From Scyliorhinus canicula (lineage: Eukaryota): a stretch of 64,000 nucleotides of DNA. This document shows positions 116 to 48,009 of the stretch, in pieces. Numbering within the stretch: position 1 is the stretch's first letter; each line of letters opens with the position of its first letter. Made by a program: the position numbers and the translations under genes. The notes under the pieces are model-generated. The model worked only from the letters and a program-made list of their open reading frames with translations, was not told the origin of the DNA and did not search any database. The stretch covers positions 83,427,830-83,491,829 of the forward strand of contig NC_052164.1 of assembly GCF_902713615.1 (NCBI RefSeq), in the 5' to 3' direction.

Positions 116-269
116 CACTGGAGAAGGCTTTTACCAAATTCGTCAGAACAAAAGGCAGGAATGCCTCTTCGAGCACTGCACCAAGGGGAGAAGCATAATA
201 CGTTTCCAAATAGATCCGAGAGTTAAACTTTTTCTCATAACCATCGCCATCGGTGAAACCCGACTCCAT
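116..269 (-). CDS. nnmt: NNMT-like methyltransferase copy A, coding exon 1 (rest of gene lies left of the window)
   Basis: ATG at 269; 154-nt exon MESGFTDGDGYEKKFNSRIYLETYYASPLGAVLEEAFLPFVLTNLVKAFSS-G; phase-1 donor GTGAGT at 115-110; N-terminus MESGFT and exon length match NNMT. Confidence 0.85.
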
Positions 270-290
270 TCCTGTCTGAACAGGAAAGTG

Positions 291-326
291 GACTGAGAGG
301 TGGATTGCAATCCCACTATATTTAAA
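291..326 (-). promoter_or_regulatory. Putative core promoter of copy A (TATA-like + Inr)
   Basis: TTTAAATATA starts 32 nt upstream of the A of CTCAGTC; same spacing in all four copies with an exon 1. Confidence 0.55.
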
Positions 327-1479
327 GGGACTGCCTCTGCCAGTAAAACTTTTGGAACTGACCCCATTGTGAGAAGGGGGAGGTGTTCCCGGAAGAGCTG
401 CCTATCATTTCACTCCACAATGTCTTTCTCTAAAAGTCACGTGAAACGTTTTGATGTTATTTGCTTCAGTTTGTCAGCATTTTTTTTTGACATCAAAATA
501 TATTTCCCTCTGTAACAGACCTCTGTGATAAAAAAAACCAATGTATCATGGGCAAAGTACAACCAAAAACAAGACCAACTCAGGTTGTACATCACGTTTG
601 TATCACTTGCAATTAATCGCCGTGCTTAAAGGTATGTGGTGCCAAAACTCAATCTATATCCATTCTCTAGGATTATGGGGAAAATAGGACATAATAAATC
701 TATTTGTGCTTGACTGCCAAACCTGTATTCTAAAGGACTGTGTAGATAAGATCTAGAAATTAGCACCCATATTTATTAAAGTTTGCGGAAAAACCTTCTC
801 ATACAAAATTAATTTTTGTAATGACATCATATACAGGTCAAGGTTCATTCTGAAAATTACCGATACAAGGTTCATATTTTTGATGTTTTAAAAAAAGGAT
901 GTTCGGCTATCACGGTCAAAAAGCTCCCAGTATATGTTAGTTGACCAAATGCACCGCACTAATATAAACAAAAGTCTCGGTACCAGAAAGGAGGACACAC
1001 TTTTCAAATGCACAATTTACAAATCTGATGTTTCAACAAATTTAAGCGCGGTACCAATGGTAATTTTAACGGTATGGACTCCTTGGATAGGTCAATGCCT
1101 GTAGAGTACTAAAGTTCCCTAACCTTCAAGGTTGCTTCCTTGCACTTACCTGCAACTTACCCGGACCCCACCCTGCACTTACCCTGATCATCCTGTGGTC
1201 TCCAGTGACCCAGGAGACCCCGCCGTTGCCGTTCCGCCTGATCCATGTTTGTATGGACCAGCACTGAATGGGCGCCTAGCTGCAGCCTCCCTAGATAGAC
1301 CGAAGAATCAAGGGAGGCTGCTGGACCAACTTCCTTGTGCGTCATTTGCTCCTGACCATTTGGGGCGGTTTTCCGACTCCGATGTCTCGCGGGACCTCCA
1401 AGAATCTAGTGGGATGCGGAAGCTATCAGGGGCTCGCTGGAGGACTTTCTCGGCATTTTCCGGCCGCGTTGCGTTGAAG

Positions 1480-3311: not shown

Positions 3312-3744
3312 TTAAGCATTCTGACACTTGTGAGCAACCAGGAAAATTGCAGCCTCACAGTCCGATATACTTCTTACATGGTCAGGGTCAACAAAAATTT
3401 CAAATCCATCTATCTCATAACCAGCCTCCTTCATAGCACTTTCTAAAAAGGCCTGATCAAGTTTCAGACATGAAAACTTCAGCTCATCAACGATGTAATA
3501 GGTCTCATTCAAAACACTAATCAGAATGAACACCCCGCCTGGTTTTAACAGAGAGGATATATTTCTGAGAGCAGCGCAGTAAGTTGCTTTATCCTTACAG
3601 GCAGCTTCCAGACACAAGGAAGTCACCAAACAATCAACAGGTTCCAATTCCACTGGATCCAGAGGGTTAGTTTGATGGACATCACACTTCAAAACTTGTT
3701 TGTTGGAATTTCTCAGCTTCTTCTCTTTCTCTGTCCATTTTTCC
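3312..3744 (-). CDS. nnmt: NNMT-like copy B exon 3
   Basis: tttcAG acceptor 3746-3745; (R)EKWTEKEKKLR..KQVLKCDV..DCLVTSLCLEAAC..LLKPGG..stop TAA 3314-3312. Confidence 0.92.
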
Positions 3745-5843: not shown

Positions 5844-6048
5844 CTGTCGCCTTCCAGTTCACACACATACTTTGCAATTGGGCTCCAGTCAAAAGCTCCC
5901 GGATCATTTTGTAACCACAGCTCAATCTCCCGGCGGTTGTTGGAAGCAAAATCGGACACAACAATTTGCTCCACGTGTCCCGACGCACAGAGAGCCAAAT
6001 GAAGACAGGGACCACATCCAATTTCAAGCAGTGTGCGGAATTTCGGAC
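5844..6048 (-). CDS. nnmt: NNMT-like copy B exon 2 (SAM motif I)
   Basis: AG 6050-6049, GT 5843-5842; GPKFRTLLEIGCGP..SDF..AFDWSP..VCELEGDR. Confidence 0.92.
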
Positions 6049-6660: not shown

Positions 6661-6998
6661 TCATATCACTTCACTCAGACTGGTAGGGAAAATACCACAT
6701 GGACGGAAATCAGCGGAGTGTGGCAACGGTCAACAAAATGCCTCATGGGCTGCAATCAAAACCCAGATGGGCTGCAGGTTGGCCCTGGGTCTCAGGTTGC
6801 CCACCAGCGAACTAAAGGGAGCTTTTGGATCAATATCCGCTTATCTGTCTTTGCTGGCACAAATCAGATGCCATTCTTCTCCATCCTTCTTGCCGCACCC
6901 AATTCCGACGAGAAAGTAATTATGTTGCTCAGTGTGACAGGTACATTGCTGCTCTGCTGGGGAAGAACTCTCTCAATAATATTGCAGCATCAGGAATT

Positions 6999-9699
6999 TT
7001 TATTGAAATTTTTTGCAGAAAATATAATCAGAATAATTTTTATTGAAATTTTTTACAGAAAATATACCAACAAACAATGAAAAGCAACAATAAAACACCA
7101 TAATAGCTGTAACACCCCCAAGATCATATCAACGCATGTATCTCACCCCCGCCCCCCACGCCCCCAAACCCAGTAAACAACAAGAGAACTTAAAAATAAA
7201 TTACATTGAAATTAAATAAGCAAACATAGTCAACGTCCCCCCCCCTCTGTCTTTTTCACCCCCCCCCCCCGGGTTGCTGCTGACCCAGTACCCTATCGCT
7301 GAGCCAGAAAGTCGAGGTAAGGTTGCCACCGCCTAAAGAACCCTTGCACCGATCCTCTTAGGGCAAATTTGACCTTCTCCAGCTTGATAAATCCCGCCAT
7401 GTCATTGATCCAGGTCTCCACGTTTGGGAGTCTCGCATCCTTCCACTGTAACAAAATCCTCCGCCGGGCTACTAGGGACGCAAAGGCCAGAACTCCGGCC
7501 TCTTTCGCCTCCTGCACTCCTGGCTTCACCCCAACCCCAAAAATCGCGAGTCCCCATCCTGGCTTGACCCTGGATCCCACCACCCTCGACACTGTCCTCG
7601 CCACCCCCTTCCAGAACTCCTCCAGTGCCGGGCATGCCCAGAACATATGGGCATGGTTCGCTGGACTCCCCGAGCACCTGACACACCTGTCTTCGCCCCC
7701 AAAGTACCTACTCATCCTAGACCCAGACATGTGGGCCCGGTGCAGCACCTTGAATTGGATGAGGCTAAGCTGCGCACATGAGAGTTAACCCTCTCCAGGG
7801 CATCAGCCCATGTCCCATCTTCGGTCTGTTCCCCCAGTTCCCCCTCCCACTTAGCTTTCAGCTCCTCTACTGATGCCTCCTCCACCTCCTGCATTACCTT
7901 GTAGATATCAGATATCTTCCCATCCTCGGCCCAGACCCCTGAAAGCACCCTCTCACTCACCCCCCCTCGCGGGAAGCAAAGGGAATCCCTCCACCTGCCA
8001 CCTAGCAAACGCCTTTACCTGCAGATACCTGAACATGTTCCCCGAGGGGAGCCCAAATTTATCCTCCAACTCCCCCAGGCTCGCAAACCTCCCATCAATG
8101 AACAGGTCCCTCAGCTGTCTGATGCCCGCTCTGTGCCAACCCTGGAACCCCGCATCAATGTTCCCCGGGACGAACCGATGGTTCCCCCTTAACGGAGCCT
8201 CCATCGAACCCCCCACTTTCCCCCTATGTCGTCTCCACTGCCCCCAAACCTTGAGGGTAGCCGCCACCACCGGACTCGTGGTATACCTCGTAGGAGGGAG
8301 CGGCCACGGCGCTGTTACCAGGGCCCCCAGGCTTGTGCCTCCACAGGACGCCATCTCCAACCGTTTCCATGCTGCCCCCTCCCCCTCCATCACCCACTTG
8401 CGCACCATCGACACATTGGCCGCCCAATAATACCCCGAGAGATTGGGTAACGCCAGCCCCCCACCATCTCTACCCCGCTCCAAGAAGACCCTCTTCACCC
8501 TCGGGGTCCCATGCGCCCAAACAAAGCTCATAATGCTGCTAGTCACCCTCCTAAAAAAGGCCCTAGGGATAAAGATGGGCAAACACAGAAAAAGGAACAG
8601 GAACCTTGGGAGAACCGTCATTTTGACGGACTGCACTCTACCCGCCAGCGATAGCGGCACCATGTCCCACCTTTTGAATTCCTCCTCCATCTGCTCTACA
8701 AGCCTGGTAAAATTAAGCTTATGGAGAGTCCCCCAACTCCTGGCCACCTGCACCCCCAGGTATCTGAAACTCTTCACTGCCCTCTTAAACGGGAGCCTCC
8801 CAATTCCCTCCTCCTGATCACCCGGGTGTACTACAAATACCTCACTCTTGCCCAGATTTAACTTATAGCCCGAGAAGCTCCAAAACTCAACCAACAGCTC
8901 CATCATCCCCGGCATTCCCCCCTCTGGGTCCGCCACATCAGGTCGTCTGCATACAGCGATACCCTATGTTCTTCCCCACCCCGCACCAGGCCCCTCCACC
9001 TCCCCGACTCCCTCGGCGCCAAAGCCAAAGGTTCTATCGCCAGTGCAAAAGCAAGGGGGACAGGGGGCACCCCTGCCTGGTCCCACGGTAGAGCCTGAAG
9101 TACTCTGATCTCCTTCCATTGGTAACTAAACTCACCATTGGCGCCTCGTAGAGCAACCTCACCCATTTGATGAACCCCTCCCCGAATCCGAACCGCTCCA
9201 GCACCTCCCACAGGTACCCCCACTCAACTCTATCAAACGCCTTCTCTGCATCCAGCGCCACTAATATCTCCGCCTCCCCCTCCACCGCCGGCATCATAAT
9301 AACATTTAACAATCTCCGCACATTCGTGTTAAGCTGCCTTTCCTTGACAAATCCTGTCTGATCCTCGTGTATCACCCCTGGCACACAGTCCTCTATCCTG
9401 GTGGCCAGGATATTGAGGAGCGAGATTGGCCTGTGTGATCCACACTGCAAGGGGTCCTTATCCCGCTTCAGGATCAGAGAGATCAACGCCCGTGACATAA
9501 TCGGGGACAAAGCCCCCCCCCCCCCCTCCCATGCCTCATTGAAGGCTCGCACCAACAGGGGGCCCACCAGATCCGCATAATTCTTATAAAATTCCACCGG
9601 GAACCCATCCGGCCCCGGCGCCTTACCTGACTGCATTTGACCAATCCCCCTGACTAGCTCCTCCAACGTAGCCTGTTCATGAAGCTCTCCACCTCCCCG

Positions 9700-9741
<42 letters not shown>

Positions 9742-10837
9742 GCTCCAACCGGTACAGTTCCACGTAAAAGTCCCTAAAGACCCCGTTCACCTCTGCCCCC
9801 TTCTGCACCACATTCCCACCCTTATCCGTCACTCCACCAATTTCCCTAGCCGCATCTCGCCTGCGGAGCTGATGCGCCAACATCCTGCTCGCCTTCTCCC
9901 CATAATCATATACCGCGCCTTTCGCCCTCCTCCACTGTGTCTCCGCCTTTCTGGTGGTCAACAAGTCGAACTTGGCCTGCAAACTATGCCATTCCCCCAG
10001 CAATCCCTCCTCCGGGGCCTCCGCGTACCTCCTATCAACGTCCAGGGCTTCCCCACCAGTCTCTCCCTCTTCCTCCTCTCCCTCCTTTCCCTATGGGCCC
10101 GGATGGAAATCAGCTCCCCCCAGATTGCTGCTTTCAGAGCCTCCCGGACCATCCCCACCTGGATCTCCCCCGTGTCATTGGTCTCAAGATACCCCTCGAT
10201 ACTTCCCTACACACCTCCTCATCAGCCAGCATCCCCACATCCAGGCACCACAGCGGGCGCTGGTCCCGCGCCTCCCCCATCTCCAGATCGACCCAGTGCG
10301 GAGCATGGTCTGAAATTGCTATGGCCGAATACTCGGCATCCTGCACCTTCGAGATCAATCCCCTGCTCAGGACGAAAAAATCTATTCGGGAGTAAACCCT
10401 ATGCACATGGGAGAAAAAGGAATACTCCCACGCCCTCGGCCCCCCAAACCTCCAGGGATCCACCCCCCCCCCCCATCTGGTCGATAAATCCCCTCAGCAC
10501 CTTGGCCGCTGCCGGCCTCCTACCCGTCCTTGAACTGGACCGGTCCAGTGGGGGATCTAGCACCGTGTTAAAGTCTCCCCCCATGATCAGGCCCCCTGCC
10601 TCCAGGTCCGGAACGCGGCCCAACCTGCGCCTCATAAAGCCAGCATCATCCCAATTCGGGGCATATACATTAACCAGCACCACCTTCTCTCCCTGCAGCC
10701 TACCCTTCACCATAACAAACCTGCCCTCCTTGTCCGCCACCACCTCAGACGCCTCGAATGCCACCCTCTTCCCCACCAGAATCGCCACCCCCCGGTTATT
10801 GGCGTCTAATCCCGAGTGGAAAACCTGCCCCACCCAC
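6999..10837 (-). mobile_element. 5'-truncated L1-clade LINE (EN-RT-CCHC, frameshifted) in intron 1 of B
   Basis: GGDFN, SDH, DAEKAFD, QGCPLSP, YADD, HMFWAC motifs; 14-bp TSD cagcatcaggaatt at 6985-6998 and 10838-10851; empty site in C near 20875. Confidence 0.93.
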
Positions 10838-12360
10838 CAGCATCAGGAATTCCTGTCAACAGATGTCTCCACTGGAGCAGTAGCAGCAAAGGGTTTGCAC
10901 GGGGAGAGATGTGAAAGGAGAGTCCATGTGAGCTGAGCGATGGACGGGAGAAGAGTGAAAAGACACATGGCAGCTAGGGGAATGCTAGTATGGCCTGAGG
11001 GAACGGAGGAGATAGGAAGGCATTATTTCCAACATGAATGAAAGTTGTTTTGGGGGGAAATAGTTGTTGGACGAAGAAGATCTGTGTGGGAGAAGATGAA
11101 TAGGAGTGTCCATGGGAAGTGGAAAGGGCGGGTGACAAATGCTGGAATGAATGGGGGAGGGAGGGAGGAAATGCTTTCTGTGGGTTGCAGGGGACAGTGT
11201 GGAGAAGGTATGTGTGAACAAGTAAACTAAGGGCTGAGGAGATCAATAAGAATAATTATGGCCCCTCTGCATTTTCTCTGGAAGAAATGACTGCCTCTTA
11301 GTTGAAAATTTATTATATAGTTGTCATTGTAACAAAGTTAACAATGAGATTTTGTGACACAAATTCCATAATGGCTTTAAAATTCTTCATAGGAAATTGA
11401 GAAATCTGCAATTTTCACCTCACTCCTTCGTTATACTACATTTATTTACAAAAAAACTGTTGTAGGCCATGTTTGAGTTTATCCTTCACATAAGTAGTAG
11501 TCCTAATCCTGTGTGGTCAATTAGTTCCCCAATTCTTGATCTATATTAATCACCTTTTCTTCAACCATCTAGTTTTACACCTTGACCTGGTCTCGGCTTC
11601 ACAGGCTCATCATGATTCTCCATGCAAAAAATAATCTTGCTCTCTGTGCATGTCTCCTTTTCCTATCTCAACATCCGAATACTATCTGTTCCACTGACTA
11701 TTGCCCATTAATTGACTCTTAATCTTTTATATTAAAAGAAAAACTTAACATGGTTCCTCCTCGCTCCAGTTATCAACTTTATTGTAGGATATGCTGGAGT
11801 GCCAATTTCCCTTAGTGCAACCAATAATGGTGCTTGGCTGCCCCAGGGCAAAGCAATATTGGAGTGAAACCCTTAAGGAGTATATACACAAGGCCTAATG
11901 CCTGCTTCAGGAGTGGGTAAAGAATACCTCTAATTTCGCCTTATCTGGGATGGTGGGTGTGGGAGGGGGACAGACCTCCAGCTTAAAGTACATGCTTGCT
12001 CATGCCGATTTTGGAACCTCAGTAGGTTCTGGCTGCTGTTCCCTTGCTTTCAATAGATCCAGTCTTCCTCAGTTACATTCCTTCTTTACATATATGTGCT
12101 CCTTTCAGCTTCTCCCCCTCAACACTCTTTTGATTCTCTCGTCAAGCTTCAATTTGCTGATCCACCACTCTTCACCTCAGTATCAATGGGGTGTCATTAA
12201 AAATCCCTTTTCCCTTTCCCTCTCCAAAAGACCCTTAAATCTCCCTTTACTTCATGCCCCGCTCAGTCGTCTCCCATTATTGCCATCTACCTCCTGCTTT
12301 ATTCCCCCAATGCTGCTCCTCAGTTGTTAGTCAACAAATGTTTCTGACTCAGGAACACTA

Positions 12361-12500
12361 GAGTTGGAGCGGGGGAGAGGAGGGGTGGGGAGTTAGAGCA
12401 GGGAGGGGCTGGGGTTGGAGCGGGGGAGTTGGAGCGGGGGGGGGGGGGAGTTGGAGCGGGGGAGGGGGGAGTTGGAGCGGGGGGGAGGGGGGTGGGAGAG
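12361..12500 (+). repeat. G-rich minisatellite (ggagttggagcggggg)n
   Basis: About 5 degenerate units; not expanded in copy C. Confidence 0.7.
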
Positions 12501-12849: not shown

Positions 12850-13003
12850 CACTGGAGAAGGCTTTTACCAAATTCGTCAGAACAAAAAGCAGGAATGGCT
12901 TTTCCAACACTTCACCAACGGGAGAAGCGTAATACGTTTCCAAATAGATCCGAGAGTTAAACTTTTTCTCATAACCATCTCCATCAGTAAAACCCGACTC
13001 CAT
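12850..13003 (-). CDS. nnmt: NNMT-like copy B exon 1
   Basis: ATG 13003; MESGFTDGDGYEKKFNSRIYLETYYASPVGEVLEKPFLLFVLTNLVKAFSS-G; donor GTGAGT. Confidence 0.92.
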
Positions 13004-16834: not shown

Positions 16835-16873
<39 letters not shown>

Positions 16874-17191: not shown

Positions 17192-17624
17192 TTAAGCATT
17201 CTTACACTTGTGAGCAACCAGGAAAATTGCAGCCTCACAGTCCGATATACTTCTTACATGGTCAGGGGCAACAAAAATTTCAAATCCATCTATCTCATAA
17301 CCAGCCTCCTTCATAGCACTTTCTAAAAAGGCCTGATTAAATTTCAGACATGAAAACTTCAGCTCATCAACGATGTAATAGGTCTCATTCAAAACACTAA
17401 TCAGAATCAGCACCCCACCTGGTTTTAACAGAGAGGCTATATTTCTGAGAGCAGCGCAGTAAGTTGCTTTATCCTTACAGGCAGCTTCCAGACACAAGGA
17501 AGTCACCAAACAATCAACAGGTTCCAATTTCACTGGATCCAGAGGGTTAGTTTGATGGACATCACACTTCAAAACTTGTTTGATGGAATCTCTCAGCTTC
17601 TTCTCTTTCTCTGTCCATTTTTCC
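17192..17624 (-). CDS. nnmt: NNMT-like copy C exon 3
   Basis: Same acceptor and frame as B exon 3; ORF track 17192..17572. Confidence 0.92.
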
Positions 17625-19735: not shown

Positions 19736-19940
19736 CTGTCGCCTTCCAGTTCACACACATACTTTGCAATTGGGCTCCAGTCAAAAGCTCCCGGATCATT
19801 TTGTAACCACAGCTCAATCTCCCGGCGGTTGCTGGAAGCAAAATCGGACACAACAATTTGCTCCACATGTCCCGAGGCACAGAGAGCCAAATGAAGACAG
19901 GGACCACATCCAATTTCAAGCAGTGTGTGGAATTTCGGAC
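19736..19940 (-). CDS. nnmt: NNMT-like copy C exon 2
   Basis: 205 nt, AG/GT bounded; GPKFHTLLEIGCGP..VCELEGDR. Confidence 0.92.
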
Positions 19941-21732: not shown

Positions 21733-21886
21733 CACTGGAGAAGGCTTTTACCAAATTCGTCAGAACAAAAGGCAGGAATGCCTTTTCCAGCACTTCACCA
21801 ACGGGAGAAATATAATACGTTTCCAAATAGATCCGAGAGTTAAACTTTTTTTCATAACCATCGCCATCGGTGAAACCCGACTCCAT
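21733..21886 (-). CDS. nnmt: NNMT-like copy C exon 1
   Basis: ATG 21886; MESGFTDGDGYEKKFNSRIYLETYYISPVGEVLEKAFLPFVLTNLVKAFSS-G; donor GTGAGT. Confidence 0.92.
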
Positions 21887-21907
21887 TCCTCTCTGAACAG
21901 GAAAGTG

Positions 21908-36511: not shown

Positions 36512-36514
36512 CAG

Positions 36515-37107
36515 GGGCGGGATTCTCCCCTACCCAGCGGGGCGGGGAGTCCGGCGTAGCGGAGTGGCGCCAACCACTCCGGTATCGTCCTGCCCAAAGG
36601 TGCGGCACCATCGGCCTTTGACGCCTGCCGCCCGGCGCCGGGGCTGGCCGAAAGGTGCCGCTGACGTCACCACCGGCGCATGCGCACTGGGGGATTCTCT
36701 TCCACGTCCGCCATGGTGGAGGCTGTGGCGGTGGCGGAAGGGAAAGAGTGCCCCCATGGCACTGGTCTGCCCGCCGATCGGTGGGCCCCAATCGCGGGCC
36801 TGGCCACCGTGGGGGCACCCCCTGGGGTCCGATCGCCTCGGCCCACCCCCAGGACCCCGGGGGCCCGCTCGCGCCGCCGATCCCGCCGCCACCAAAGGTG
36901 GTTCAAACCTCGGCGGTGGGAGAGGCCTCCCAGTGGCGGGACTTTGGCCCATCGCGGGCCAGAGAATTGCCGCAGGGGGCTCGCCGCGGCACGCTTCCCG
37001 CCCCCGCCAATTCCCGGGTGGCGGAGAATTTCTGCCACGGCGGGGGTGGGATTTTCGGCGGCCCCGGGCGATTCTCCGACCCTGCTGGGGGTCGGAGAAT
37101 TTCGCCC
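36515..37107. mobile_element. Harbinger-type MITE
   Basis: TIR gggcgggattctcc / ggagaatttcgccc. Confidence 0.78.
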
Positions 37108-37370
37108 ATGTGCTGGGCTCCTCCATCATTGAGGATGGGGATATTTGTGGAGCCTCCTCCTCAGTGGGTTGTTTAATTGTCCACCACTATTCATGGCTGG
37201 ATGTGGCAGGACTGCAGAGATTGGATCTGATGCGTTCGTTGTGGAATCGCTTAGCTCTTTCTATTACATGCTGCTTATGCTGTTTGGCACACAAGTAGTC
37301 ATGTGCCATAGCTTCACCTGGCCTGATGTTGCTCCTGGCATGCTCTCCATGCACTCCTCATTGAACCAGT

Positions 37371-37715: not shown

Positions 37716-38048
37716 TAATCCCCTGACTTGGTGGTAATGGTAGTCGAGTGGGGGATATGTCTGGCCATGAGGTAGCAGATTATGGTTGAATACAAGTCTG
37801 CTGTTGCTGATGGCTCACAGTACCTCATGGCTGCCCAGTCTTGAGTTGCTAGATTTGTTCGAAGTCTATCCCGTTTAGCACGATGGTAGTGCCACACAAC
37901 ATTATTGAATATGTGACTCAGAAGTGAGTGTAGAATACAATAATTAATGGAAACAAGCACTTTGAATTGGTTCACTAATATGTTCTTTATTTTTGCTCTT
38001 TGGCCAGTATTGAACCCAGAGTAGATCTGCAGAAGCTGCAATAATGAA

Positions 38049-38490
38049 TCAGCATGGAGCATTCTTATTCTTAAGAGCAACTAGGAAAAATATAGCATTA
38101 AAGTCTGACAGAGTGTTCTGAGATTTGTCAAGACCATCAAAAATTTCCAACTGCTCTATCTCATATCCTACTTCCTTCACAATTTTTCTCAAAAAGGCCT
38201 GATCGAATTTTACACATGAAAACTTGTGATTGTTGACTGTATAAAAGGTCTGGTTCAAAACACCATTCATAATGAGCACCCCGCCTGGTTTTAACAGGGC
38301 GGTTACATTTCTGAGAGCAGCGCAGTAAGCTGCTTTATCCTTACAGGCAACTTCCAGACACAAGGACGTCATCAGACAATCAACAGGTTCCAATTCCACT
38401 GGATCCAGAGGGTTAGTTTGATTGACATCACACTTCAAAACTTGTTTGACGGAATCTCTCAGCTTCTTCTCTTTCTCTGTCCATTTTTCC
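38049..38490 (-). CDS. nnmt: NNMT-like copy D exon 3
   Basis: Acceptor AG 38492-38491; ..KCDVNQTNP..CLEVAC..LLKPGGVLIMNGVLNQTFY..NKNAPC*. Confidence 0.9.
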
Positions 38491-39349
38491 CTGAAAGATA
38501 CAAGCTCAGTGTCTGAGACATGATACTGCAGAGAATCACATTCAATTTATTCCATGTTAAAGGAGATGCCTGGAATTGTGTGCTTCAAACTGATTTCTCA
38601 CAGCTCCCATGTGTTCTTATAATTCCTGGTTAAGGGGTTTCTCCACAGCAACAAACAAGTGGTGACTGTGTTGAGCAAAGAACCTTTGATGGCTGTTGCA
38701 CAGTTAAAGGAGGTACGTTAAAATGAACACCAGCTCAAAAAATAAAGTAAGAACTTAATTGTGTATGATGTCTTTAAGTTTTTTGACTACAAACTGGTGC
38801 ATTTACATAGTGTTGTGACCAAGTTTGGAAGGGTGAATAAATACCTCTATTTTCCATCCATGCGGTTGATTATAACAGAGTTGGATTATTTCTAAACTTG
38901 TGACTTTTATCCAATTTATTACGTACTTCATCAAATGAAAATCTATATGAAGAAATAAGTCAGCCAAACCTCAGCTTAGCTTCGCAATAAAAGTCACACA
39001 CACAATAAGCTCAAGTGGGGGAAGCAGAGTGCTCAAGGGAGGAAAATGAAGGGCTGGAGGAGGAATAAAGACATAAAGAAGAACCTTGATACAGAAAAAA
39101 GTGGAAATAGGTGTGACGTATGCTCACCTGATTTGCACCTCACATACAATTAAGTACAAACATTGTTGCTATGCGTGGAAATATTGATTTTACACACACC
39201 ATGTCACAAGCAATGAGAAAGGATTTTCTTTGATGTTGGAGGGAAGTGAGTTGTCCAGTACACTGAAAGATGTTTGCTAGGTGCAATAATGAAAAAGGAG
39301 GTCTGATAGCCCATCAAACCTCTTGCATCATGCAGTTGCATCATTGTTT

Positions 39350-39572
39350 TTTTAAAATTTAAAGTACCCAATTATATTTTTCCAAATAAGGGGCAATTTC
39401 TGCATGGCCAATCTGCCTACACTGCACATCATTGTGTTTGTGGGGCTGAGACCCACGTAGACACGGGGAGAATGTACAAACTCCACATAGACACTGGCCC
39501 AGCGCTGGAATCGAACCAGGGTCATCAGCGCTGTGAGGCAACAGTGCTAACCACTATGCCACCGTGCCGGCC
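39350..39572 (-). mobile_element. HE1-like SINE (short A-tailed subfamily)
   Basis: tRNA head and core similar to 6444-6660. Confidence 0.75.
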
Positions 39573-40128
39573 AATTGCATCGTAGTTGATCTGAGTTTTC
39601 ACTCTGTCTAACCATCTTGGTCCTGTTACCTTCATAATCCTGGGCTCTATAAGGGTTACCTAAACAATTTAGGATGGCCAACTTAATATTTGACACAAAG
39701 AATCAGAATCTCCAATATTGCAACCTTCCCTTCCAGCCTGAACTCAAGTATCAAGTCTAGAATATGTGCCTGTATCCCAGGGTGGACTTGGAGCCACCAC
39801 ATTTGGACGCAGCAATGAGACTGTCACCAACTGAGACAAGCTGGCAGAAGCAGAAAATTCCAAAAATTAGTTGGTCCGAGTTGCAAATTTGTAAAGGTGG
39901 AAACATTAGATGGAAAGCGTAGGGTTGTTTGATGTGCATTGCCGCAGGCAAATTGAGTAGGACCTGCAAGCAAAGCAGTGAGTAAATTTGCATCTATGGC
40001 TGCAGTACAACCTATATGAATTTTGGAAGTACATGTACCCTGCTGCCTGATCTGGAAATGCTGTGGTGTGAGCACAGCTGGATCACTGTGAGCATTTTTG
40101 AGCACTAGAGCCTTTGGAAGAATATATT

Positions 40129-40320
40129 GGCCAGAATTCTCCAAACGTTGGGATTCACTATTCCGGCTGGCAGCACACCCCCGCCCGCGGGTTCCCCCTT
40201 GGCACGGGGTGACTTCTATGCAAAATCCCATTGACTAGTGGTGGGAGTAGGGAATGTCGATGGCAGTGAATGGTGTGCTGCTGAGCAACATGCGGCTGGG
40301 GGGACCGGAGAAATCGGCCC
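40129..40320. mobile_element. Short Harbinger-type MITE
   Basis: ggccagaattctcc..ggagaaatcggccc; TSD att. Confidence 0.7.
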
Positions 40321-40574
40321 ATTGGCTTTGCAAGCAGTACAGGCTTAATTTTACTAGAATGATAGCACGCACTATACGTGTTCAGCTCAAAGGAGAGATT
40401 GAACAAATTAGGTTTGTTTCACTGGAATTTAACAGGTTCTGTGGTGGCTTGATTTGAAATATTCTAAAGACCAAAGGGAACAGAAGAAGCACATTGGACA
40501 AACCTGTTTTGATTCGTTGGAGAGTCGAAGACGAGATAGCTTTGAATGCAAAATAAAAGCCAGCATCGAAATCC

Positions 40575-40870
40575 ATAGAATAGAATCCTTACAATGCAGA
40601 AGGAGGCCATTCTGCCCATCGAGTCTGCAATGGCCATTTGAAAGAGCACCTGACCTGGGCCCACTCCCTCACTCTATCCCTGTGACCCAGTAAGCCAACC
40701 TAATCTGAACATTTTTGGATTGTGCGAGGACACCAGAGCATCCGGAGAAAACCCGTGCTGATACTGGGAAAAAGTGCAAACTCCACACAGACAGTCACCC
40801 AAGGCTGCAAATGAACCCAGATCCCTGGTGCTGTGAGGCAGCAGTGCTAACCACTGTGGCACCGTGCCAC
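40575..40870 (-). mobile_element. HE1-like SINE, older
   Basis: Head, core and CR1-type tail (catagaatagaat). Confidence 0.75.
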
Positions 40871-41174
40871 CATAAAGGGGAAAAGAGAAAATGCTTAATC
40901 ACAAAGAATTGTAAAGGTTTAGAACTCTTCCACAAATGACAATTGATGCCAAATTGTTGGTTACTTTGTGATTATCATAGTATCAATGTTTCATCAAGTG
41001 AATTAAAATGCCTTCTGGGATTTACAGAGAAACCTTTAAGCGTGTGAGGATACTCAGCACGTGAGCGAGGGTTGCTCAGCACAGGTAGGCAGCACCTTTC
41101 TTTAATTGGACGTTATCTTTTTACCATTCGACTAAGGTGCCCTTAAACTGCAAGCCCTAAATCACCCTAAGCAC

Positions 41175-41394
41175 TGATGTGGAGATGCCGGAGTTGGACT
41201 GGGGTGAGCACAGTAAGAAGTCTTACAACACCAGGTTAAAGTCCAACAGGTTTGTTTCAAACATGAGCTTTCGGAGCACTGCTCCTTCCTCAGGTGAATC
41301 ACTCACCCGAGGAAGGAGCAGTGCTCCGAAAGCTAGTGTTTGAAACAAACATGTTGGACTTTAACCTGGTGTTGTAAGACTTCTTATTGTGCTG
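41175..41394. mobile_element. Penelope-like palindromic insertion with hammerhead-like cores
   Basis: About 90-bp inverted arms 41207-41297 / 41303-41393; 11-bp TSD accctaagcac; empty site in E at about 47538. Confidence 0.8.
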
Positions 41395-41684
41395 ACCCTA
41401 AGCACAGCAGTGATCTCTCATTTAGTAGATCCATTTTTGCCCTGTCACAAGTTGATTTGTTCCTTCTATTTCATTCTGAACAGATTACATTTGTATTTTT
41501 AGGTGGCTGTTCAGATACTTTGGCACCAGCGGAGACCAGTGAATTCAGTGAACTTTGATATCAAACCCAATATTTTCATCGCCAACAAAGTCTCAGTAAC
41601 ACACTGAGCTGAGTATGAACCATCGAGTAGCTATTTATCATTTTGAAAAAAAAACACTCCGGGTTGAAGCAATTTAATGATTAC

Positions 41685-41889
41685 CTGTTGCCTTCCAGTT
41701 CACACACTAATTTTGCAAAGTGGCTCCAGTCAAAAGCTCCCGGATCATTTTTCAGCCACAGCTTAATCTCTTGGCAGTTGCTGCGAACAAAATCGGACAG
41801 AACAATTTCCTCCGCGTGCCCCGAGGCACAGAGAGCGAAGTGGAGACAGGGACCAGATCCAATTTCAAGCAGTCTGCGGAATTTCGGAC
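41685..41889 (-). CDS. nnmt: NNMT-like copy D exon 2
   Basis: Manual translation GPKFRRLLEIGSGPCLHFALCASGHAEEIVLSDFVRSNCQEIKLWLKNDPGAFDWSHFAKLVCELEGNR; AG/GT bounded. Confidence 0.9.
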
Positions 41890-42708
41890 CTGGAAGAATT
41901 TAATCACCTGTCATTAAGTGGGAAATAAAGTGATAAAATCCATATCAAATTGTACTGAAGGATCAGACAAAGGAAGTTTGAGGATCAATTCTCTGTTTGG
42001 ACAGCTTTGCAAGCAGACAGAGGTTTGATTCTTCTCAACCCTCCTGGCTGACAAATCCCAGGTGATGATTACGATGTTGCTCCATAAATTTTGGTGCACG
42101 CTGAATAAAAGGGCCCTTTCTGCATTGAGCTGGGAACAATGGGGGGGGGGGGGGGGGGGGGGGCGTGGGGGGCGGGGGGGGGGGGGAGGGGGGTGAAAGA
42201 TGTCAGTGCAGATTGGGGAGCAAAGTGCTGGAGTGTCCTTGTTCTCTGAGAGAGGGACAACGAGCGGAAAGAGGAAGAATACAAAAGAGGAGGTAGAACA
42301 TGGCAACGTAACCGAATGAAGATGGGAGAGAGGAACATCTTCAGGGGGGAAAGATGAAGATGAGGGGTAATGGAAAAGGCATGAGGCAGGAGACAGAGGC
42401 CAGGATGAATGGGAGGAAGGAAAGGAAGGATTTCTGGGAGGTGGGGTCTGGCAGAGAGTCTGGTGAGGTGGAGTGTGGGATGAAGGTCTTTTTGTTACTC
42501 TGAATTTTAAACTGAGTTTATAAACACATCTCGTGACACAAATACATAATGGTTACACATTCTACGCAGGTAATGGATAAAATCTCTGTACTTATCAGCT
42601 CTTATGTAAAAACTTATACGTTTTTACATTTTGACATGATGCCTGCTTCACATCTCACAGACTCAAAGCCTGTGTGCAAAGTTTATCCCTTGCTGTCTCT
42701 GCTCTTTG

Positions 42709-42996
42709 ATAATAATCTTTATTGTCACAAGTCGGCTTACGTTAACACTGCAAAGAAGTTACTGCGAAAAGCCCCAAGTCGCTCCATTCCAGCGCCTGTT
42801 TGAGTACACAGAGGGAGAATTCAGAATGTCCAAATTACTTAACAGTAGATCCTTCGGGACTTGTGGGAGGAAACCAGAGCACCACGCAGACATGGGGAGA
42901 ACGTGCAGACTATGCACAGACAGTGACCCAACCGGGAATCGACTTGGGACCCTGGCGCTGTGAAACAACAGTGCTAACCACTGTGCTACAGTGCCG
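42709..42996 (-). mobile_element. tRNA-derived SINE ((att)n tail family)
   Basis: HE1-like head plus cttgtgacaataaagattattat tail. Confidence 0.78.
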
Positions 42997-43847
42997 CCGA
43001 AAAGACCTATTTAGATCTCATTGAATACTGTCCGTTATATTAACTCATTCCCAACATTGATACATTTAATCACCCCATGAAATCTCTTAAACGTTTCTCT
43101 TCATTGAAAATCATCCAGTGTATTAATTATTTCTTCATGTTTTTATTTCCGCACAACAAGCAATGTCCCAGCTTTATCCAACTAGTCCTGGATTGTTAGG
43201 TAAACCTGCAGCTTAATTTATGACTACACAGTGACCTTCCCTTCACTGCTGTTCATTCCCCATTTTCATTTCTCCTTTTTCCTCTCCCATCTCATAGCCA
43301 CCCTGCGCAGCTGCCCACCCTTTTCACTGCTATCAATTAGTGCGTATCATCCATTCTTTTCTCCACCTTCCCTCCTAATGTCACCAATATAGTCCCAGGT
43401 TGCCCCTTGAGGAGCCCGGGAACGGATGCTGGCAAGATACTGCTCGTCTTATCCCAATGCGAACTGCAGGGACGTACGTTTGGCAGCTAACTTGCCTTTT
43501 AGGGAAGTGTTTCACACTACTGTAAATAGAACGGTCCAACCCAGGTGGACCGAGGTGGAATCCAAAGTGGATCCAACGTCGCTGCCTGTTCTTGACGCTC
43601 AGGAGATCTGGAACTCGAGAGATGGAGCAGGGCTGCCCTGACCAGACTCTAAACTAGCGGTATTTGCTGTAGATTTAGGAATGTGTTTCAGCCCCCAGCA
43701 GCTGTGCAGTCAAAAAAACCTTCACGTGGAACTTGAATGAAAAAGCACTGGGCAAAACAAACGCACAGTAGAAACGACAGGTTCACAAATGGGGGTGCCA
43801 CCTTTGGGCTAAGAATCTAGTTAATTCATGTCAAAGAACTTACTCAC

Positions 43848-44001
43848 CATTGGAAAATACATTTACCAAATTCTTCAGAGAAAAAGTCAAGAATTCATTT
43901 TCCTGTCGATGTCCAGAGGTTGAATTAAAGTATGTTTCCAAAAAGACCCGGGAGTCAAATTTTTCCTCATAATAGTTGCCATCGCTAAAGCTTATCTCCA
44001 T
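43848..44001 (-). CDS. nnmt: NNMT-like copy D exon 1
   Basis: ATG 44001; 154 nt MEISFSDGNYYEEKFDSRVFLETYFNSTSGHRQENEFLTFSLKNLVNVFSN-G; donor GTGAGT. Confidence 0.88.
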
Positions 44002-44022
44002 TTTATCTCAAACAGAAAACTC

Positions 44023-44059
44023 GACTGAGTGAAGGCGGCGTTGCAGGTTTCCTTTATCA
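44023..44059 (-). promoter_or_regulatory. Putative core promoter of copy D (GATAAA at -32 + Inr)
   Basis: TGATAAAG at the position of the TATA-like box; CTCAGTC conserved. Confidence 0.5.
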
Positions 44060-44144
44060 TTTGTTTTGATGGGGGTGGTGCCTGTATGCAAAAACTGCTG
44101 AGACCCACATCAGTGCAGACAATAGCTCCCTGCACTTGTGGAAA

Positions 44145-44600
44145 GTTCTGGCAAATCCCATGGCTCTGTCATCCTGGCTAGCTTGATCCCGGTCGAAACA
44201 GATGCAGTTGGTGAGCCCTTGCGAAGAGTGCAGCCACCACCTCCTTGATACATTTATGAGTGGAGGCTTGCAAGAACCGCAAAGGTCACATATGGAGCCC
44301 TGCAAGGAGCCGGTTCCATAAACGTTGAGGGCGGATACGGCTTTCATGGCCGGAGGCAGTGGTTGCCCTCCAGGTGGCACCAACGCATGCTGAATGTGCT
44401 CCTGGACAGGTGAAGATTTTGCCAACTCGCGTTGTTGTTCATTTCCAGGAAGTACTGATGCCACCTGTAGACCCTGTGCCATTTAAGGTGCCTCTCTGGA
44501 TAGTGAGCAGGCCCTGCAACCCGTTCCTCATTGGGGTTCTGCTCCTACCTCTGGAGAGCCAGGCGCCTCTGTTGATGTCTTCTCTCCTCGTGACATCCTG
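44145..44600 (-). mobile_element. Decayed PIF/Harbinger transposase fragment
   Basis: GGQPLPPAMKAVSALNVYGTGSLQGSICDLCG..FDRDQASQDDRAMGFA resembles the HARBI1-type ALxFYATGSFQ region. Confidence 0.6.
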
Positions 44601-45749
44601 GAAGAATGATTGCTAGTTTCACAGGCTCTGTCTCTCTGTCTCTCTCTCACTGATCATTCAAAGTGAATGAGGGAGACAGTTAATGGTGAGTTCTCCCCTC
44701 TAAGGGCTGACCCTATACCCATCCACTCCTAGGAACAGCGTATTGACGGACACTGATTACTGTGCTGGCCATCACATTGAGGACCTTTCCGTCAGAATAT
44801 CCCAAAATGGACAAGGCCCCACATCACCCCCTGACTGAGGGACCACAGCTTTGGCAAGATTCCTGTCTCTTGAGCCCTCATGTAAATCACAGACATTTGT
44901 CATTTGGTTCACTCTAAAGGCCCATGCACTATCCTGATATCTTGGGGGAGGGGGGGGGGGGCAGCTGTAAGGAAGCCACAGCACCCGCATCTGATGGATC
45001 AGGGTGCTCTGCTTAGCCTGTTTGCTCTTGCCCTCTGCCGGGGAGGGTGTATGTGTTCACCCTCTCAGAGAATCGTGCAGGGAAAGCATGGCACTCACTG
45101 AGTGGGGAGGGCAACTGCAATGCATTAGCTGTTGAATGTGCAAAAAACTAGTGGCTCAATTATCTCATATAGAAATAAATTTTCTTTGTTGTCAGGCCTC
45201 TCTAATTGAGTAGACATGATCAGCCATTCTCCACTCTGTCACCTCATGCAGCCTCAGGATGGGTCAGTTTTAAGCTTGGCTTTCTTACTTCGTGTCATGG
45301 GATCTCCTTTGCCTACTTGACAATGATGACGGTGCCTCAGATTAAAATCTTATTTTAAGGCAGCACCTCCAACACTGAAAGGCTTCTTCAGTACTGGAAT
45401 GAACCGTCTGTCCAGATATTGTGGTTAAATGCCTGCAGTTGGGCTTTGAAGCCCACCCCCCCACCCTCCCCCACCCCCCAACTGCTGATCCAGAGGCAAA
45501 AATGCCAACAACTGAGCCATGGTTGAGAGCCTATTTAGCCGATGGAGATTGGACAATGGCAATACCTATGAAATGTACTGGAGTGTCAGTCAACATCAGG
45601 TTCTATTGAATATGTGGGTCAGAAGTGAGTGTGGAACCAAACAATCAATGGAAACAAACACTTTGAATTGGTTTAATAGTACGTTCTTTATTTTTGCTCT
45701 TTGGTCAGTATTGAACACAGAATAGATCTGCAGAAGCTGCGATAATGAA

Positions 45750-48009
45750 TCAGCATGGAGCATTCTTATTCTTCTAAGCAACCAAGTAAAATATAGCCTT
45801 AAAGACTGACAGAGTGTTTAGAGACTATCAAAATTTCCAACTGCTCTATCTCATACCCTGCCTCTGTCAAAGTTTGTTTCAAAAAGGCCCAATCAAATGT
45901 TACACATGCAAACTCAGTATCTGAGACAGAATGCCGCAGAGAATCTCATTCAATTTATTCCATGTTCAAGGAGATGCCTGGAATTGTGTGCTTCAAACTG
46001 ATTTCTCACAGCTTTCATTTGTTCTTATAATTCCCAGTTGAGGGGTTACTCCACAGCAAAAACCTAGTGCCGAAGTGTTTTGGGAAGAACATTTGATGGC
46101 TGTTATACAGTTAAAATAAGGAACATTAAAATGAACACCAGCTCAAAAAATAAAGAAATACTTTAATTGTGTATGATGTCTTTAAGTGCTTTGACTACAA
46201 ACTGATGCATTTATACAATGTTCTGACCAAGTCTGGATAAATTCCTCTCTTTTCCACCCATGCGGTTGATTATAACAGAGTTGGATTATTTTTTTAAGTT
46301 GTGATTTTTATCCAATTTATTATGTACTTCACCACGTGAAAATCTATATTCAGAAATAAGGCAGCCGAATCTCACCTTGGGGCACGTTGATTGGTGGTAT
46401 CTCAGACGGATGTGTAAAAACTTTAGAACAGGTCATTATTACAAGGGAGGAAGTGTTTTAAAAAGCATTAAGGAAGACAATTGCCAAGGGAAGATGGCAT
46501 CTATCCCAGGTTACTGAGGAAGACAAGAGATGAAATCGCTGGGCCTCCAACAGAAATCTTTGTGTCCTCGTTGGCCACAGGTGAGATCCTAGGGGATTGG
46601 AGGATAGCTAATGTTGTACCGTTGATTAAAAAGGGATGCAAGGATAACCCGGGTAATTATAGGCCAGTGAGCCTGACGTCAGTGATAGTGAAATTGTTGG
46701 AAAAGATTCTCAGGGGTAGGATAGATGCACATTTGGAAGTGAATGGTCTTATTAGCGACAGACGGAATGGGTTTGTATAGAAAGGGTATAGAAGGATACA
46801 GACGGTTGATCTAGATGGGACACATGATCGGAGCAGGCTTGGAGGATCAAAGGGCCTGTTCCTGTGCTGTATTGTTCTTTGTTCTTTAACCCTGTCTACC
46901 CACCTTGGCCCTGTTACCCCTGAAGCCCTGAGATCTATAAGGTTTACTGAAACAATTAGGATGGCCAACTTAATATTTGACACAAAGAATCAGAATCTCC
47001 AATGTTGCAACCTTCCCTTCCATCCTGAACTCAAGTATCAGTCTAGAATATGTGCCTATATCCCAGGGTGGGACTTGATCTCAATACATTTGGACTCAGC
47101 AATGAGACTGTCACCAACTGAGCCAAGCTGGCAGAAACAGAAAATTCCAAAAATTAGTTTATCCGAGTTGCAAATCTGTAAAGGTGGAAACATTAGATGG
47201 AAACCAAAGGGCTGTTTGATGTGCATTGCCACAGGCTGATCAGGATTATACTTCCAAATTGAACAGGAACAAGAGGCAAATTAGTCACTAAATTTGCACC
47301 TTATGGATGCAGTAGTCTATTTGAGTGTTGGGTGTACATGCAACCTGCTGCCTTATTTGCAAATGCTCTGCTTCAACCTACCTGGGGCACTGGGATTTAC
47401 ATAGAAACCGTTAAACTTGTGAGGACACTCAACAACTGAGTGAGGGTTGCTCAACAAAGAGAGGCAGCATAATTCTTTAATTGGATGTTATCATTTTACG
47501 ACTTGACGAAATGTCGTTAAACTGCAAGTTCTAAATCACCCTAAGCACAGCAATGATCTCTCAGTCCAGTGGATCCATTCTCGCCCTGTCACGGGTGATG
47601 TGATCCTCCTATTTCATTTTTACGTAGCTGCTCGGATACTTTGGCACACCAGAGGAGACCAGTGAACTCGGTGAACTTTGGGATCAAACCCAATATTTCC
47701 ATCTCCCGAAAAGTCTCAGAAACACAATGAGCTGAGTATGAACCATTTAGTAGCTATTTATCACTTTGGAAACGCATACCAAGTCTAAGCAACTTAATGA
47801 TTACCTGTCGTCTTCCAATTCACACACTAATTTTGCAAAGTGGCTCCAGTCAAAAGCTCCCCGATCATTTTGTAACCAGAGCTCAATCTCTTGGCAGTTG
47901 CTGCGAACAAAATCGGACAGAACAATTTCCTCCGCGTGCCCCGAAAAACAGAGAGCGAAGTGGAGACAGGGACCAGATCCAATTTCAAGCAGTCTGCGGA
48001 ATTTCGGAC
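45750..48009 (-). pseudogene. NNMT-like pseudogene copy E (paralog of D): exon 3 remnant 45750-45914, open exon 2 47805-48009, exon 1 not found
   Basis: About 280-bp deletion removes the exon 3 acceptor and 5' part; premature TAG near 45775 and a small deletion; intron homology to D stops at about 50400. Confidence 0.88.
46400..46890 (+). mobile_element. CR1 LINE fragment with 3' tail in intron 2 of E
   Basis: DGIYPRLL..DWRIANVVP..NYRPVSLTS. Confidence 0.85.

What the first reader, a model, noticed from the sequence alone, without database searches (positions are those of the whole stretch)
116..48009. Expanding shark NNMT-like array whose enzymes lack the nicotinamide pocket: candidate undescribed small-molecule methylation system
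Seen: at least 5 same-strand copies (3 complete ORFs, 1 running off the window, 1 pseudogene) with NNMT exon structure and SAM motifs (EIG[C/S]GP, SDF, CDV). Known (numbering recalled): human NNMT positions nicotinamide with D197, S201, S213 and Y242; PNMT uses E185 and E219 for its amine. By manual alignment B/C have S, E and C at 197/201/213, no Tyr near 242, and E at 167 (CLEAA). That gives two PNMT-like acidic residues in an NNMT-like scaffold. Motif-I TIYQ has become CLH[L/F]. Inference: the acceptor is probably a primary/secondary amine or thioether, not nicotinamide. Elasmobranch methylamine osmolytes, dietary amine or Se/S detoxification and tryptophan-derived metabolites are speculative candidates only.
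Basis: partly seen in the sequence, partly recalled or inferred. Interest (0 to 1): 0.8.

Follow-up and report, generated by a model that had tools for sequence, protein, structure and literature searches.

The report
Catshark NNMT-like methyltransferase gene array
This is a real tandem cluster of four working genes and one dead copy for small-molecule methyltransferases in the small-spotted catshark. The genes are already annotated, and their "odd" pocket residues are the normal ancestral state of this enzyme family outside mammals, so the cluster is an ordinary family expansion and not a new methylation system.

Summary
The minus strand carries five NNMT/PNMT/TEMT-family (PF01234) copies.
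- Copy A has only exon 1 in the window.
- Copies B, C and D are intact three-exon genes.
- Copy E is a pseudogene.

The window is from Scyliorhinus canicula. RefSeq already names A-D "nicotinamide N-methyltransferase-like". Copies differ by 4-16% in DNA, so they are not assembly duplicates. dN/dS is 0.4-0.55. Spliced transcripts of at least A and C exist.

E167 and E201 align exactly with PNMT E185 and E219.

These states are not special to the shark. E167, G/S197, E201, C213 and His69 are the commonest or common states across fish, lungfish, amphibian and reptile members and PNMT. The D167/D197/S201/S213/Y242 signature occurred only in mammalian NNMT.

In the tree, shark genes group with lungfish and ray-finned fish. 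Mammalian NNMT and INMT split later, inside amniotes, so the shark genes are co-orthologues of both.

The substrate remains unknown. Most likely these are broad-specificity amine or azaheterocycle N-methyltransferases, possibly including nicotinamide. Interest is low to moderate.

The parts
116..269 (-). Copy A, exon 1 (codons 1-51 plus 1 nt). The rest of the gene lies beyond the low end of the window.
   Evidence: ATG and GT donor. Identical to the first 51 residues of P0366 = XP_038635597.1, an intact 263-aa protein.
12850..13003 (-). Copy B, exon 1
   Evidence: Gene model. The spliced protein is identical to P0365 = XP_038635550.1.
5844..6048 (-). Copy B, exon 2 (motif I EIGCGPCLH and the SDF motif)
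   Evidence: AG acceptor and GT donor are present.
3312..3744 (-). Copy B, exon 3 including the stop codon (KCDV, CLEAAC, KPGG, ISVLNETYY, FSC)
6992..12488 (.). Extra ~5.5 kb in intron 1 of copy B relative to copy C. It carries LINE reverse-transcriptase ORFs.
   Evidence: Self-blastn breakpoints. RVT_1 hit on ORF 9037-9666.
21733..21886 (-). Copy C, exon 1
   Evidence: The protein is identical to P0001 = XP_038635549.1. A contig from run X1 is identical across the exon 1-exon 2 joint.
19736..19940 (-). Copy C, exon 2
   Evidence: Transcript contigs join 19938|21731 and 17623|19735, skipping CT..AC on the plus strand, which is GT..AG on the minus strand.
17192..17624 (-). Copy C, exon 3 including the stop codon
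   Evidence: PF01234, 136 bits; alignment to human NNMT.
43848..44001 (-). Copy D, exon 1 (Phe at the Y20 position)
   Evidence: The protein is identical to P0011 = XP_038635548.1.
41685..41889 (-). Copy D, exon 2 (EIGSGPCLHF)
38049..38490 (-). Copy D, exon 3 including the stop codon (MNGVLNQTFY, giving G197 and Q201)
   Evidence: PF01234, 131 bits.
47805..48009 (-). Pseudogene E, exon 2 (open frame, 12 of 205 nt differ from D)
45730..45968 (-). Pseudogene E. The tail of intron 2 is fused to the 3' part of exon 3. Relative to D there is a 282-bp deletion that removes the acceptor and codons ~121-208, plus 1-bp and 10-bp deletions.
   Evidence: Pairwise alignment with D. tblastn fragment at 45927..45802.

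Best explanation
The region is a tandem array in the small-spotted catshark. It holds four intact genes (A, B, C, D) and one decayed copy (E) for cytosolic SAM-dependent small-molecule methyltransferases of the NNMT/INMT/PNMT family.

The shark genes descend from the single ancestral gene that later gave rise, inside amniotes, to mammalian NNMT and INMT. They are therefore co-orthologues of both, not NNMT orthologues that lost a pocket.

They keep the family's ancestral acceptor pocket. It has two glutamates, at the positions of PNMT E185 and E219 (NNMT positions 167 and 201). It also has Gly or Ser at 197 and Cys at 213. The SAM site is fully conserved.

Inferred mechanism: SAM binds as in NNMT. 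The glutamate pair positions a protonatable nitrogen of a small amine or azaheterocycle for methyl transfer. The enzymes act as clearance or phase-II-type methyltransferases.

The old D versus A/B/C split changed pocket residues (Y20F, S197G, E201Q, Y203F). That implies different substrate preferences. A, B and C are young, near-redundant copies.

Whether nicotinamide is a substrate is open.
For: Shown here:
- Gene models with canonical splice sites.
- PF01234 match well above the cut-off.
- AlphaFold2 model of C with pLDDT 95.7, and TM 0.93-0.96 and rmsd 1.5 A to human NNMT.
- SAM-site residues G63, G65, P66, D85, N90, C141, D142 and C165 are invariant in 12 shark sequences.
- dN/dS is 0.41 for B-C and 0.54 for C-D.
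- Spliced transcript contigs occur in three studies. One carries copy-A-specific bases and one is identical to C.
- Copies are 84-96% identical in DNA, so they are true paralogues.
- The same layout of one D-type plus three B/C-type genes is seen in S. torazame.
- In the tree, sharks are monophyletic (100/99) and sister to lungfish, then ray-finned fish. Mammalian NNMT and INMT are sisters inside the amniote clade.
- The AU test rejects a clade of sharks plus mammalian NNMT (p = 1e-4).
- Pocket states are family-wide common states.
- The equivalence with PNMT E185/E219 was mapped.
- A toad member of the family methylates tryptamines (PMC10570959). So substrate diversity among genes annotated "NNMT-like" is documented.
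Against: - No enzymatic data exist for any shark, fish or reptile member, so substrate class and physiological role are inference only.
- The node joining mammalian NNMT and INMT (88/56) and the tetrapod clade (82/58) are only moderately supported.
- The lungfish-shark grouping hints at hidden paralogy.
- The AU test group was named after the tree was seen.
- Synteny could not be checked.
- Tissue of expression is unknown because run identities are coded.
- Transcript contigs from near-identical paralogues can be chimeric.
Confidence: 0.8

Rival explanations
1. The array enzymes are the shark's genuine nicotinamide N-methyltransferases. The pocket carboxylate sits at position 201 (Glu) instead of 197 (Asp), and nicotinamide clearance is their main job, as it is assumed to be for NNMT across vertebrates.
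For: - Only these S. canicula family members were recovered in the homologue search.
- Y20, Y204 and the whole SAM site are conserved in A/B/C.
- The reptile clade that contains true mammalian NNMT also has E201 with Thr or Ile at 197. The mammalian state therefore evolved from an E201 state.
- Reviews assume a vertebrate-wide NNMT function (PMC8533529).
Against: - D197 is reported as indispensable for nicotinamide methylation in human NNMT (PMC8956669, PMC12650368). It is absent here.
- Position 197 is among the most variable sites in sharks (91st percentile of entropy).
- S213 and Y242 are also absent.
- Copy D additionally lacks Y20.
- The two-Glu arrangement is the one PNMT uses for an amine substrate (plus recalled PNMT literature).
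Confidence: 0.3
2. One reading: a shark-specific, expanding, previously undescribed small-molecule methylation system. Possible roles are methylamine osmolytes, detoxification of dietary amines or selenium/sulphur compounds, or tryptophan metabolites.
For: - Ser197 is restricted to Scyliorhinus, Carcharodon and Stegostoma copies.
- Motif I GPCLH is shared only by sharks and lungfish, plus a few others.
- A, B and C are recent copies (dS 0.06).
- D and A/B/C differ at pocket residues.
Against: - Every flagged residue except S197 is the common non-mammalian state.
- Copy number (1 + 3) is the same in S. torazame. Most other sharks sampled show one or two genes.
- No link to osmolyte or selenium/sulphur chemistry was found in sequence or in the literature.
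- dN/dS below 1 gives no sign of adaptive diversification between A, B and C.
Confidence: 0.07
3. A, B and C are assembly duplicates of one gene, or non-functional relics.
For: High similarity among them (95-96% protein identity).
Against: - The B and C gene bodies are 96.3% identical and their flanks 89-95%. B has a private 5.5-kb insertion.
- There are 14 amino-acid differences between B and C.
- Separate transcripts carry A-specific and C-specific bases.
- There are three paralogues in the sister species too.
- Reading frames and splice sites are intact.
Confidence: 0.01

Closest known systems
Mammalian nicotinamide N-methyltransferase (NNMT, EC 2.1.1.1; e.g. PDB 3ROD, 2IIP)
   Same: - About 46% identity and the same fold (TM 0.93-0.96).
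- Same length and same SAM-site residues.
- Y20, Y24/Y25 and Y204 are kept in A/B/C.
- It is the best PDB sequence hit.
   Different: - The nicotinamide-contacting set D167/D197/S201/S213/Y242 is replaced by E/S/E/C/His-or-gap (G197 and Q201 in D).
- Motif I reads CLH[LF] instead of TIYQ.
- It is not the orthologue. NNMT and INMT separate later, inside amniotes.
Non-mammalian 'NNMT-like' genes of ray-finned fish, lungfish and sauropsids (uncharacterised RefSeq models such as Amia, gar, Protopterus and turtle/alligator NNMT)
   Same: - Same pocket signature: CLEAACKD, L-N/G-E-T-F/Y-Y and FSC.
- His at position 69.
- Closest clade in the tree (98/91 with fish, 99/93 with lungfish).
- Tandem multiplicity is common.
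   Different: - Sharks (with lungfish) have Cys at position 67.
- Scyliorhinus A/B/C have Ser rather than Gly at 197.
- The local 1 + 3 (+1 pseudogene) array is specific to the genus.
Phenylethanolamine N-methyltransferase (PNMT; PDB 1HNN, 6WS1)
   Same: Both substrate-binding glutamates (E185, E219) have exact counterparts in the shark proteins. Position 197 is Gly in PNMT, as in copy D.
   Different: - PNMT is a separate clade (100/100) at about 32-35% identity.
- It has an N-terminal extension.
- Its motif is CLEAVSPD rather than CLEAACKD.
Indolethylamine / thioether methyltransferase (INMT; PDB 2A14) and toad RmNMT (PMC10570959)
   Same: - Same family.
- E at position 167 and Cys at 213 in human INMT.
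- They show that family members annotated NNMT-like can methylate amines such as tryptamine.
   Different: - INMT has V197 and L201, so no second Glu.
- It is an amniote/mammal-specific branch, sister to NNMT.
- The toad enzyme belongs to the separate tetrapod NNMT-like expansion.

Membership tests
NNMT/PNMT/TEMT family (Pfam PF01234) | Profile match above Pfam's gathering score | tested here: met
   Exon 3 of C scores 136.3 bits and exon 3 of D 131.2 bits against a cut-off of 25. Exon 1 scores 30.3 bits.
NNMT/PNMT/TEMT family (Pfam PF01234) | Class I SAM-methyltransferase fold with the family's N-terminal helical cap | tested here: met
   The AlphaFold2 model has pLDDT 95.7 and pTM 0.92. Foldseek gives TM 0.93-0.96 and rmsd 1.5 A to human and mouse NNMT.
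NNMT/PNMT/TEMT family (Pfam PF01234) | SAM-binding residues (GxGP motif I, D85, N90, C141-D142-V143) | tested here: met
   These are invariant in 12 shark sequences. T67C and Y69H are lineage-wide substitutions also seen in other members.
Bona fide NNMT (EC 2.1.1.1) | Orthology to mammalian NNMT to the exclusion of INMT | tested here: not met
   Mammalian NNMT and INMT are sisters within the amniote clade. Sharks group with lungfish and ray-finned fish. The AU test rejects sharks plus mammalian NNMT (p = 1e-4).
Bona fide NNMT (EC 2.1.1.1) | Key residues D197 and Y20 (PMC8956669, PMC12650368) | tested here: not met
   Y20 is present in A/B/C but is Phe in D. Position 197 is Ser in A/B/C and Gly in D.
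Bona fide NNMT (EC 2.1.1.1) | Nicotinamide-contacting S201, S213 and Y242 (roles recalled from the 3ROD structure paper, which was not held in the library) | tested here: not met
   The shark proteins have E or Q at 201, C at 213, and His, Ser or a gap at 242.
Bona fide NNMT (EC 2.1.1.1) | Catalyses nicotinamide to 1-methylnicotinamide | not testable with these tools
   This needs a recombinant enzyme assay. No literature on shark or fish enzyme activity was found.
PNMT | Membership of the PNMT clade | tested here: not met
   PNMT sequences form a separate clade with 100/100 support.
PNMT | Substrate-binding Glu pair E185/E219 | tested here: met
   PNMT E185 aligns with NNMT position 167 and E219 with position 201. 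Both are Glu in A/B/C. D has E and Q.
INMT / thioether S-methyltransferase | Membership of the mammalian INMT clade | tested here: not met
   The INMT clade (100/99) is sister to mammalian NNMT, far from the sharks.

The most novel reading that the evidence does not exclude
The D197-type nicotinamide pocket is a mammalian invention. The two-glutamate, PNMT-like pocket kept by sharks, fishes and sauropsids makes their "NNMT" genes amine N-methyltransferases that do not clear nicotinamide efficiently. If so, the assumed vertebrate-wide NNMT-NAMPT partnership would hold only for mammals. The catshark array (A/B/C versus D) would then be a convenient natural pair for finding the ancestral substrate(s).
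Probability: 0.2. Interest if true: 0.55.

Novelty: new member of a known kind. Interest (0 to 1): 0.27.

Why it matters
For the catshark itself this is routine. It is a lineage-specific tandem expansion of an already annotated enzyme family.

The useful by-product is comparative. In 138 family members examined, the residues that define nicotinamide binding in human NNMT were found only in mammalian NNMT. The shark, fish and reptile genes labelled "NNMT(-like)" carry the PNMT-type glutamate pair instead.

Automatic "NNMT" names outside mammals therefore should not be read as evidence of nicotinamide methylation. Models of NAD metabolism that assume NNMT activity across vertebrates rest on untested enzymology.

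Tried and rejected
- **Assembly duplication of A/B/C.** Rejected. DNA divergence is 4-11%, B has a private 5.5-kb insertion, and paralogue-specific transcripts exist.
- **Synteny test for NNMT versus INMT locus identity.** The rest of the window (48-64 kb) holds only retroelement ORFs. A look-up around the Chiloscyllium orthologue returned no neighbours or DNA. No conclusion was possible.
- **Literature on NNMT-family activity or 1-methylnicotinamide in sharks or fish**. Nothing relevant was found beyond the toad enzyme paper and NNMT reviews. The structure paper of Peng et al. 2011 was not held, so the roles of S201, S213 and Y242 rest on recall.
- **Earlier scan notes near this place.** None exist. 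One note on an unrelated methyltransferase elsewhere in the genome has no bearing.
- **Pseudoenzyme idea based on the motif I changes T67C and Y69H.** Rejected as the leading view. These residues are invariant across sharks and common family-wide, and all other SAM contacts are conserved.
Full report
**What is there**

A six-frame motif scan and tblastn with one spliced copy located every NNMT-like exon in the window. All lie on the minus strand. Splice-aware models give the following.
- Copy A has exon 1 only (269..116). The gene continues off the window.
- Copy B is 13003..12850, 6048..5844, 3744..3312.
- Copy C is 21886..21733, 19940..19736, 17624..17192.
- Copy D is 44001..43848, 41889..41685, 38490..38049.

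Exon sizes are 154/205/433 nt (442 nt in D). All introns are GT-AG. The products are 263, 263 and 266 residues.

Copy E keeps an open exon 2 (48009..47805). Its exon 3 has lost the acceptor and the first 266 nt through a 282-bp deletion, and it carries two further small deletions. No exon 1 is detectable upstream.

The introns and spacers are full of LINE and LTR-retroelement ORFs.

**Identity and annotation status**

Exon 3 of C and D match Pfam PF01234 (NNMT/PNMT/TEMT) at 136 and 131 bits against a cut-off of 25. The best solved relatives by sequence are human and mouse NNMT (E about 1e-39), then INMT and PNMT.

A homologue search shows the window is Scyliorhinus canicula. Copies D, C, B and A are RefSeq proteins XP_038635548.1, XP_038635549.1, XP_038635550.1 and XP_038635597.1. 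All are named "nicotinamide N-methyltransferase-like". Copy A is intact in the full genome. The genes are therefore not new to the databases.

**Real paralogues, expressed and constrained**
- Self-comparison gives 96.3% identity between the B and C gene bodies and 89-95% for the exon 1 and upstream units of A/B/C. B has a private 5.5-kb insertion in intron 1. D matches B/C only over exon 3 (84%), and D matches E at 85-89%. This excludes assembly duplication.
- dN/dS is 0.41 for B-C (dS 0.06) and 0.54 for C-D (dS 0.35). That is relaxed but clear purifying selection.
- Contigs from three independent studies, laid on 17100-22000, skip exactly the two predicted introns. One 950-nt contig covers all three exons.
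- Base-by-base comparison shows that this contig carries copy-A-specific bases in exon 1 (8 of 9 variant sites). Another contig is identical to C across exons 1-2. At least A and C are therefore transcribed and spliced.
- An index look-up suggests D-type mRNA sits in a different set of runs from A/B/C-type mRNA (compared). I could not lay reads to confirm this.
- S. torazame has the same complement of one D-type gene (94% identical to D) and three B/C-type genes. The three B/C-type genes cluster by species (98/95). This means either concerted evolution or parallel triplication. "Expanding" is thus only weakly supported.

**The pocket residues**

HMMER aligns C exon 3 to human NNMT without gaps from residue 123 to 236. 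The substitutions are D167->E, T163->S, D197->S, A198->V, S201->E and S213->C, with His or a gap at Y242. Motif I is GCGPCLHL against GSGPTIYQ.

I derived native PNMT numbering from the alignment of a PNMT to PDB 6WS1, which carries a 12-residue tag. PNMT E185 is the Glu of CLEAV, which is NNMT position 167. PNMT E219 is the second Glu of ALEESWY, which is NNMT position 201.

Two reviews state that D197 and Y20 are key for nicotinamide methylation (PMC8956669; PMC12650368). The roles of S201, S213 and Y242 are from my recollection of the 3ROD paper, which was not available.

**Why this is not special to the shark**

I tabulated these columns in 138 full-length family members, using a rodent NNMT as the numbering reference.
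- The complete signature D167/D197/A198/K200/S201/S213/Y242 occurs only in mammalian NNMT, including platypus and marsupials.
- Every fish, lungfish, amphibian, reptile and bird member has Glu at 167, apart from two caecilian copies with Gln and one with Asp. So do the mammalian "NNMT-like" paralogue and INMT.
- Gly is the usual residue at 197.
- Glu201 is standard in ray-finned fish, lungfish, some salamander genes, the sauropsid genes closest to true NNMT, and PNMT.
- Cys213 is common.
- His69 is standard in fish, and occurs in many turtle genes and some frog genes.

Among 105 representatives of 50%-identity clusters the picture is the same.
- E167 occurs in 84.
- G197 occurs in 47, S197 in 12 and D197 in 2.
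- E201 is the commonest state, and so is C213.
- H69 occurs in 30 and Y69 in 33.

Within sharks the SAM-site residues are invariant, whereas position 197 is one of the most variable sites (S/G/T/V, 91st percentile of entropy). It is met for everything except Ser197 and, partly, Cys67.

**Phylogeny**

The tree used 64 sequences, with IQ-TREE under LG+C20+F+G4 and PNMT as outgroup.
- Sharks are monophyletic (100/99).
- They are sister to lungfish (99/93), and these together are sister to ray-finned fish (98/91).
- Tetrapod sequences form the other side (82/58).
- Within tetrapods, mammalian NNMT and INMT are sisters (88/56). They sit inside an amniote clade that also holds the reptile and bird "NNMT" genes.
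- Forcing sharks and mammalian NNMT together costs 61 log-likelihood units (AU p = 1e-4). The group was chosen after the tree was seen.
- D groups with Mustelus (99/87) and is sister to all other shark copies. The D versus B/C split is therefore old.

The shark genes are best seen as pre-duplication co-orthologues of NNMT plus INMT that retain the ancestral pocket. The nicotinamide pocket is a derived mammalian feature.

**Structure**

An AlphaFold2 model of C, built on 90 aligned sequences, has mean pLDDT 95.7 and pTM 0.92. It superposes on human NNMT at TM 0.93-0.96 and rmsd about 1.5 A. The tools do not give coordinates, so pocket geometry could not be measured. The pocket assignments rest on the ungapped sequence alignment.

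**How it most likely works**

What is shown: these are intact, transcribed, constrained genes for NNMT-fold enzymes with a complete SAM site.

What is inferred:
- They transfer the methyl group of SAM to a nitrogen (less likely sulphur or selenium) of a small molecule held between Y20, Y204 and the E167/E201 pair, by analogy with PNMT.
- A/B/C and D have diverged in specificity. D has F20, N196, G197, Q201 and F203.
- The physiological role is clearance or modification of small endogenous or dietary amines and azaheterocycles.
- Nicotinamide is possible. A carboxylate at 201 may stand in for Asp197, and the sauropsid relatives of true NNMT share this state. I give about 0.3 to nicotinamide being a main substrate.
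- A toad family member that methylates tryptamines (PMC10570959) shows that substrate variety among genes annotated "NNMT-like" is already documented.

**Verdict**

The "undescribed methylation system" interpretation is not supported as something particular to this array. It is a new, uncharacterised but annotated member set of a known family.

The broader point is that the nicotinamide pocket seems confined to mammalian NNMT. This is a modestly interesting lead, but it concerns the whole family and not this locus.

Noticed in passing
window 20380-20543 (intron 1 of copy C): A short interspersed repeat with enormous summed contig depth in transcript-like runs (45,000-129,000) and many reads with "goes back" joints. 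It is evidently a very high-copy, transcribed SINE-like element of the catshark genome.
   Followed up: no
window 54700-56547 (+): An uninterrupted 615-aa ORF with a reverse-transcriptase domain (RVT_1, E = 5e-32). It may be a young LINE copy. A second RT fragment at 48126-48911 also carries an ALKBH8_N-type Pfam match.
   Followed up: partly
window 34000-37300: A very GC-rich stretch (GC up to 0.69) of low-complexity sequence that is open in many frames (Pro/Gly/Arg-rich ORFs on both strands). It lies between the B/C-type copies and copy D. Its nature is unknown.
   Followed up: no
window 24175-29482 (-): Remains of LTR-retroelement genes upstream of copy C (rve integrase core and Integrase_H2C2). 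Related RT and integrase fragments recur upstream of A (1698-2279) and B (14734-15753) as part of the duplicated unit.
   Followed up: partly
window 38000-44050 (copy D) versus 17100-22000 (copy C): Runs whose contigs hold the A/B/C-type mRNA (X1, X3, X4) hold almost none of D's words. D's words appear at an mRNA-sized share in other runs (X7, X25, X26). This hints at different tissue or stage expression of the old paralogues.
   Followed up: partly
P0084, P0086, P0088, P0107 (mammalian 'NNMT-like' proteins; not in the window): Many mammals carry a second, little-known "NNMT-like" paralogue with E167 and G197. In the tree it belongs to the large tetrapod NNMT-like expansion, not to the NNMT/INMT pair.
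   Followed up: partly
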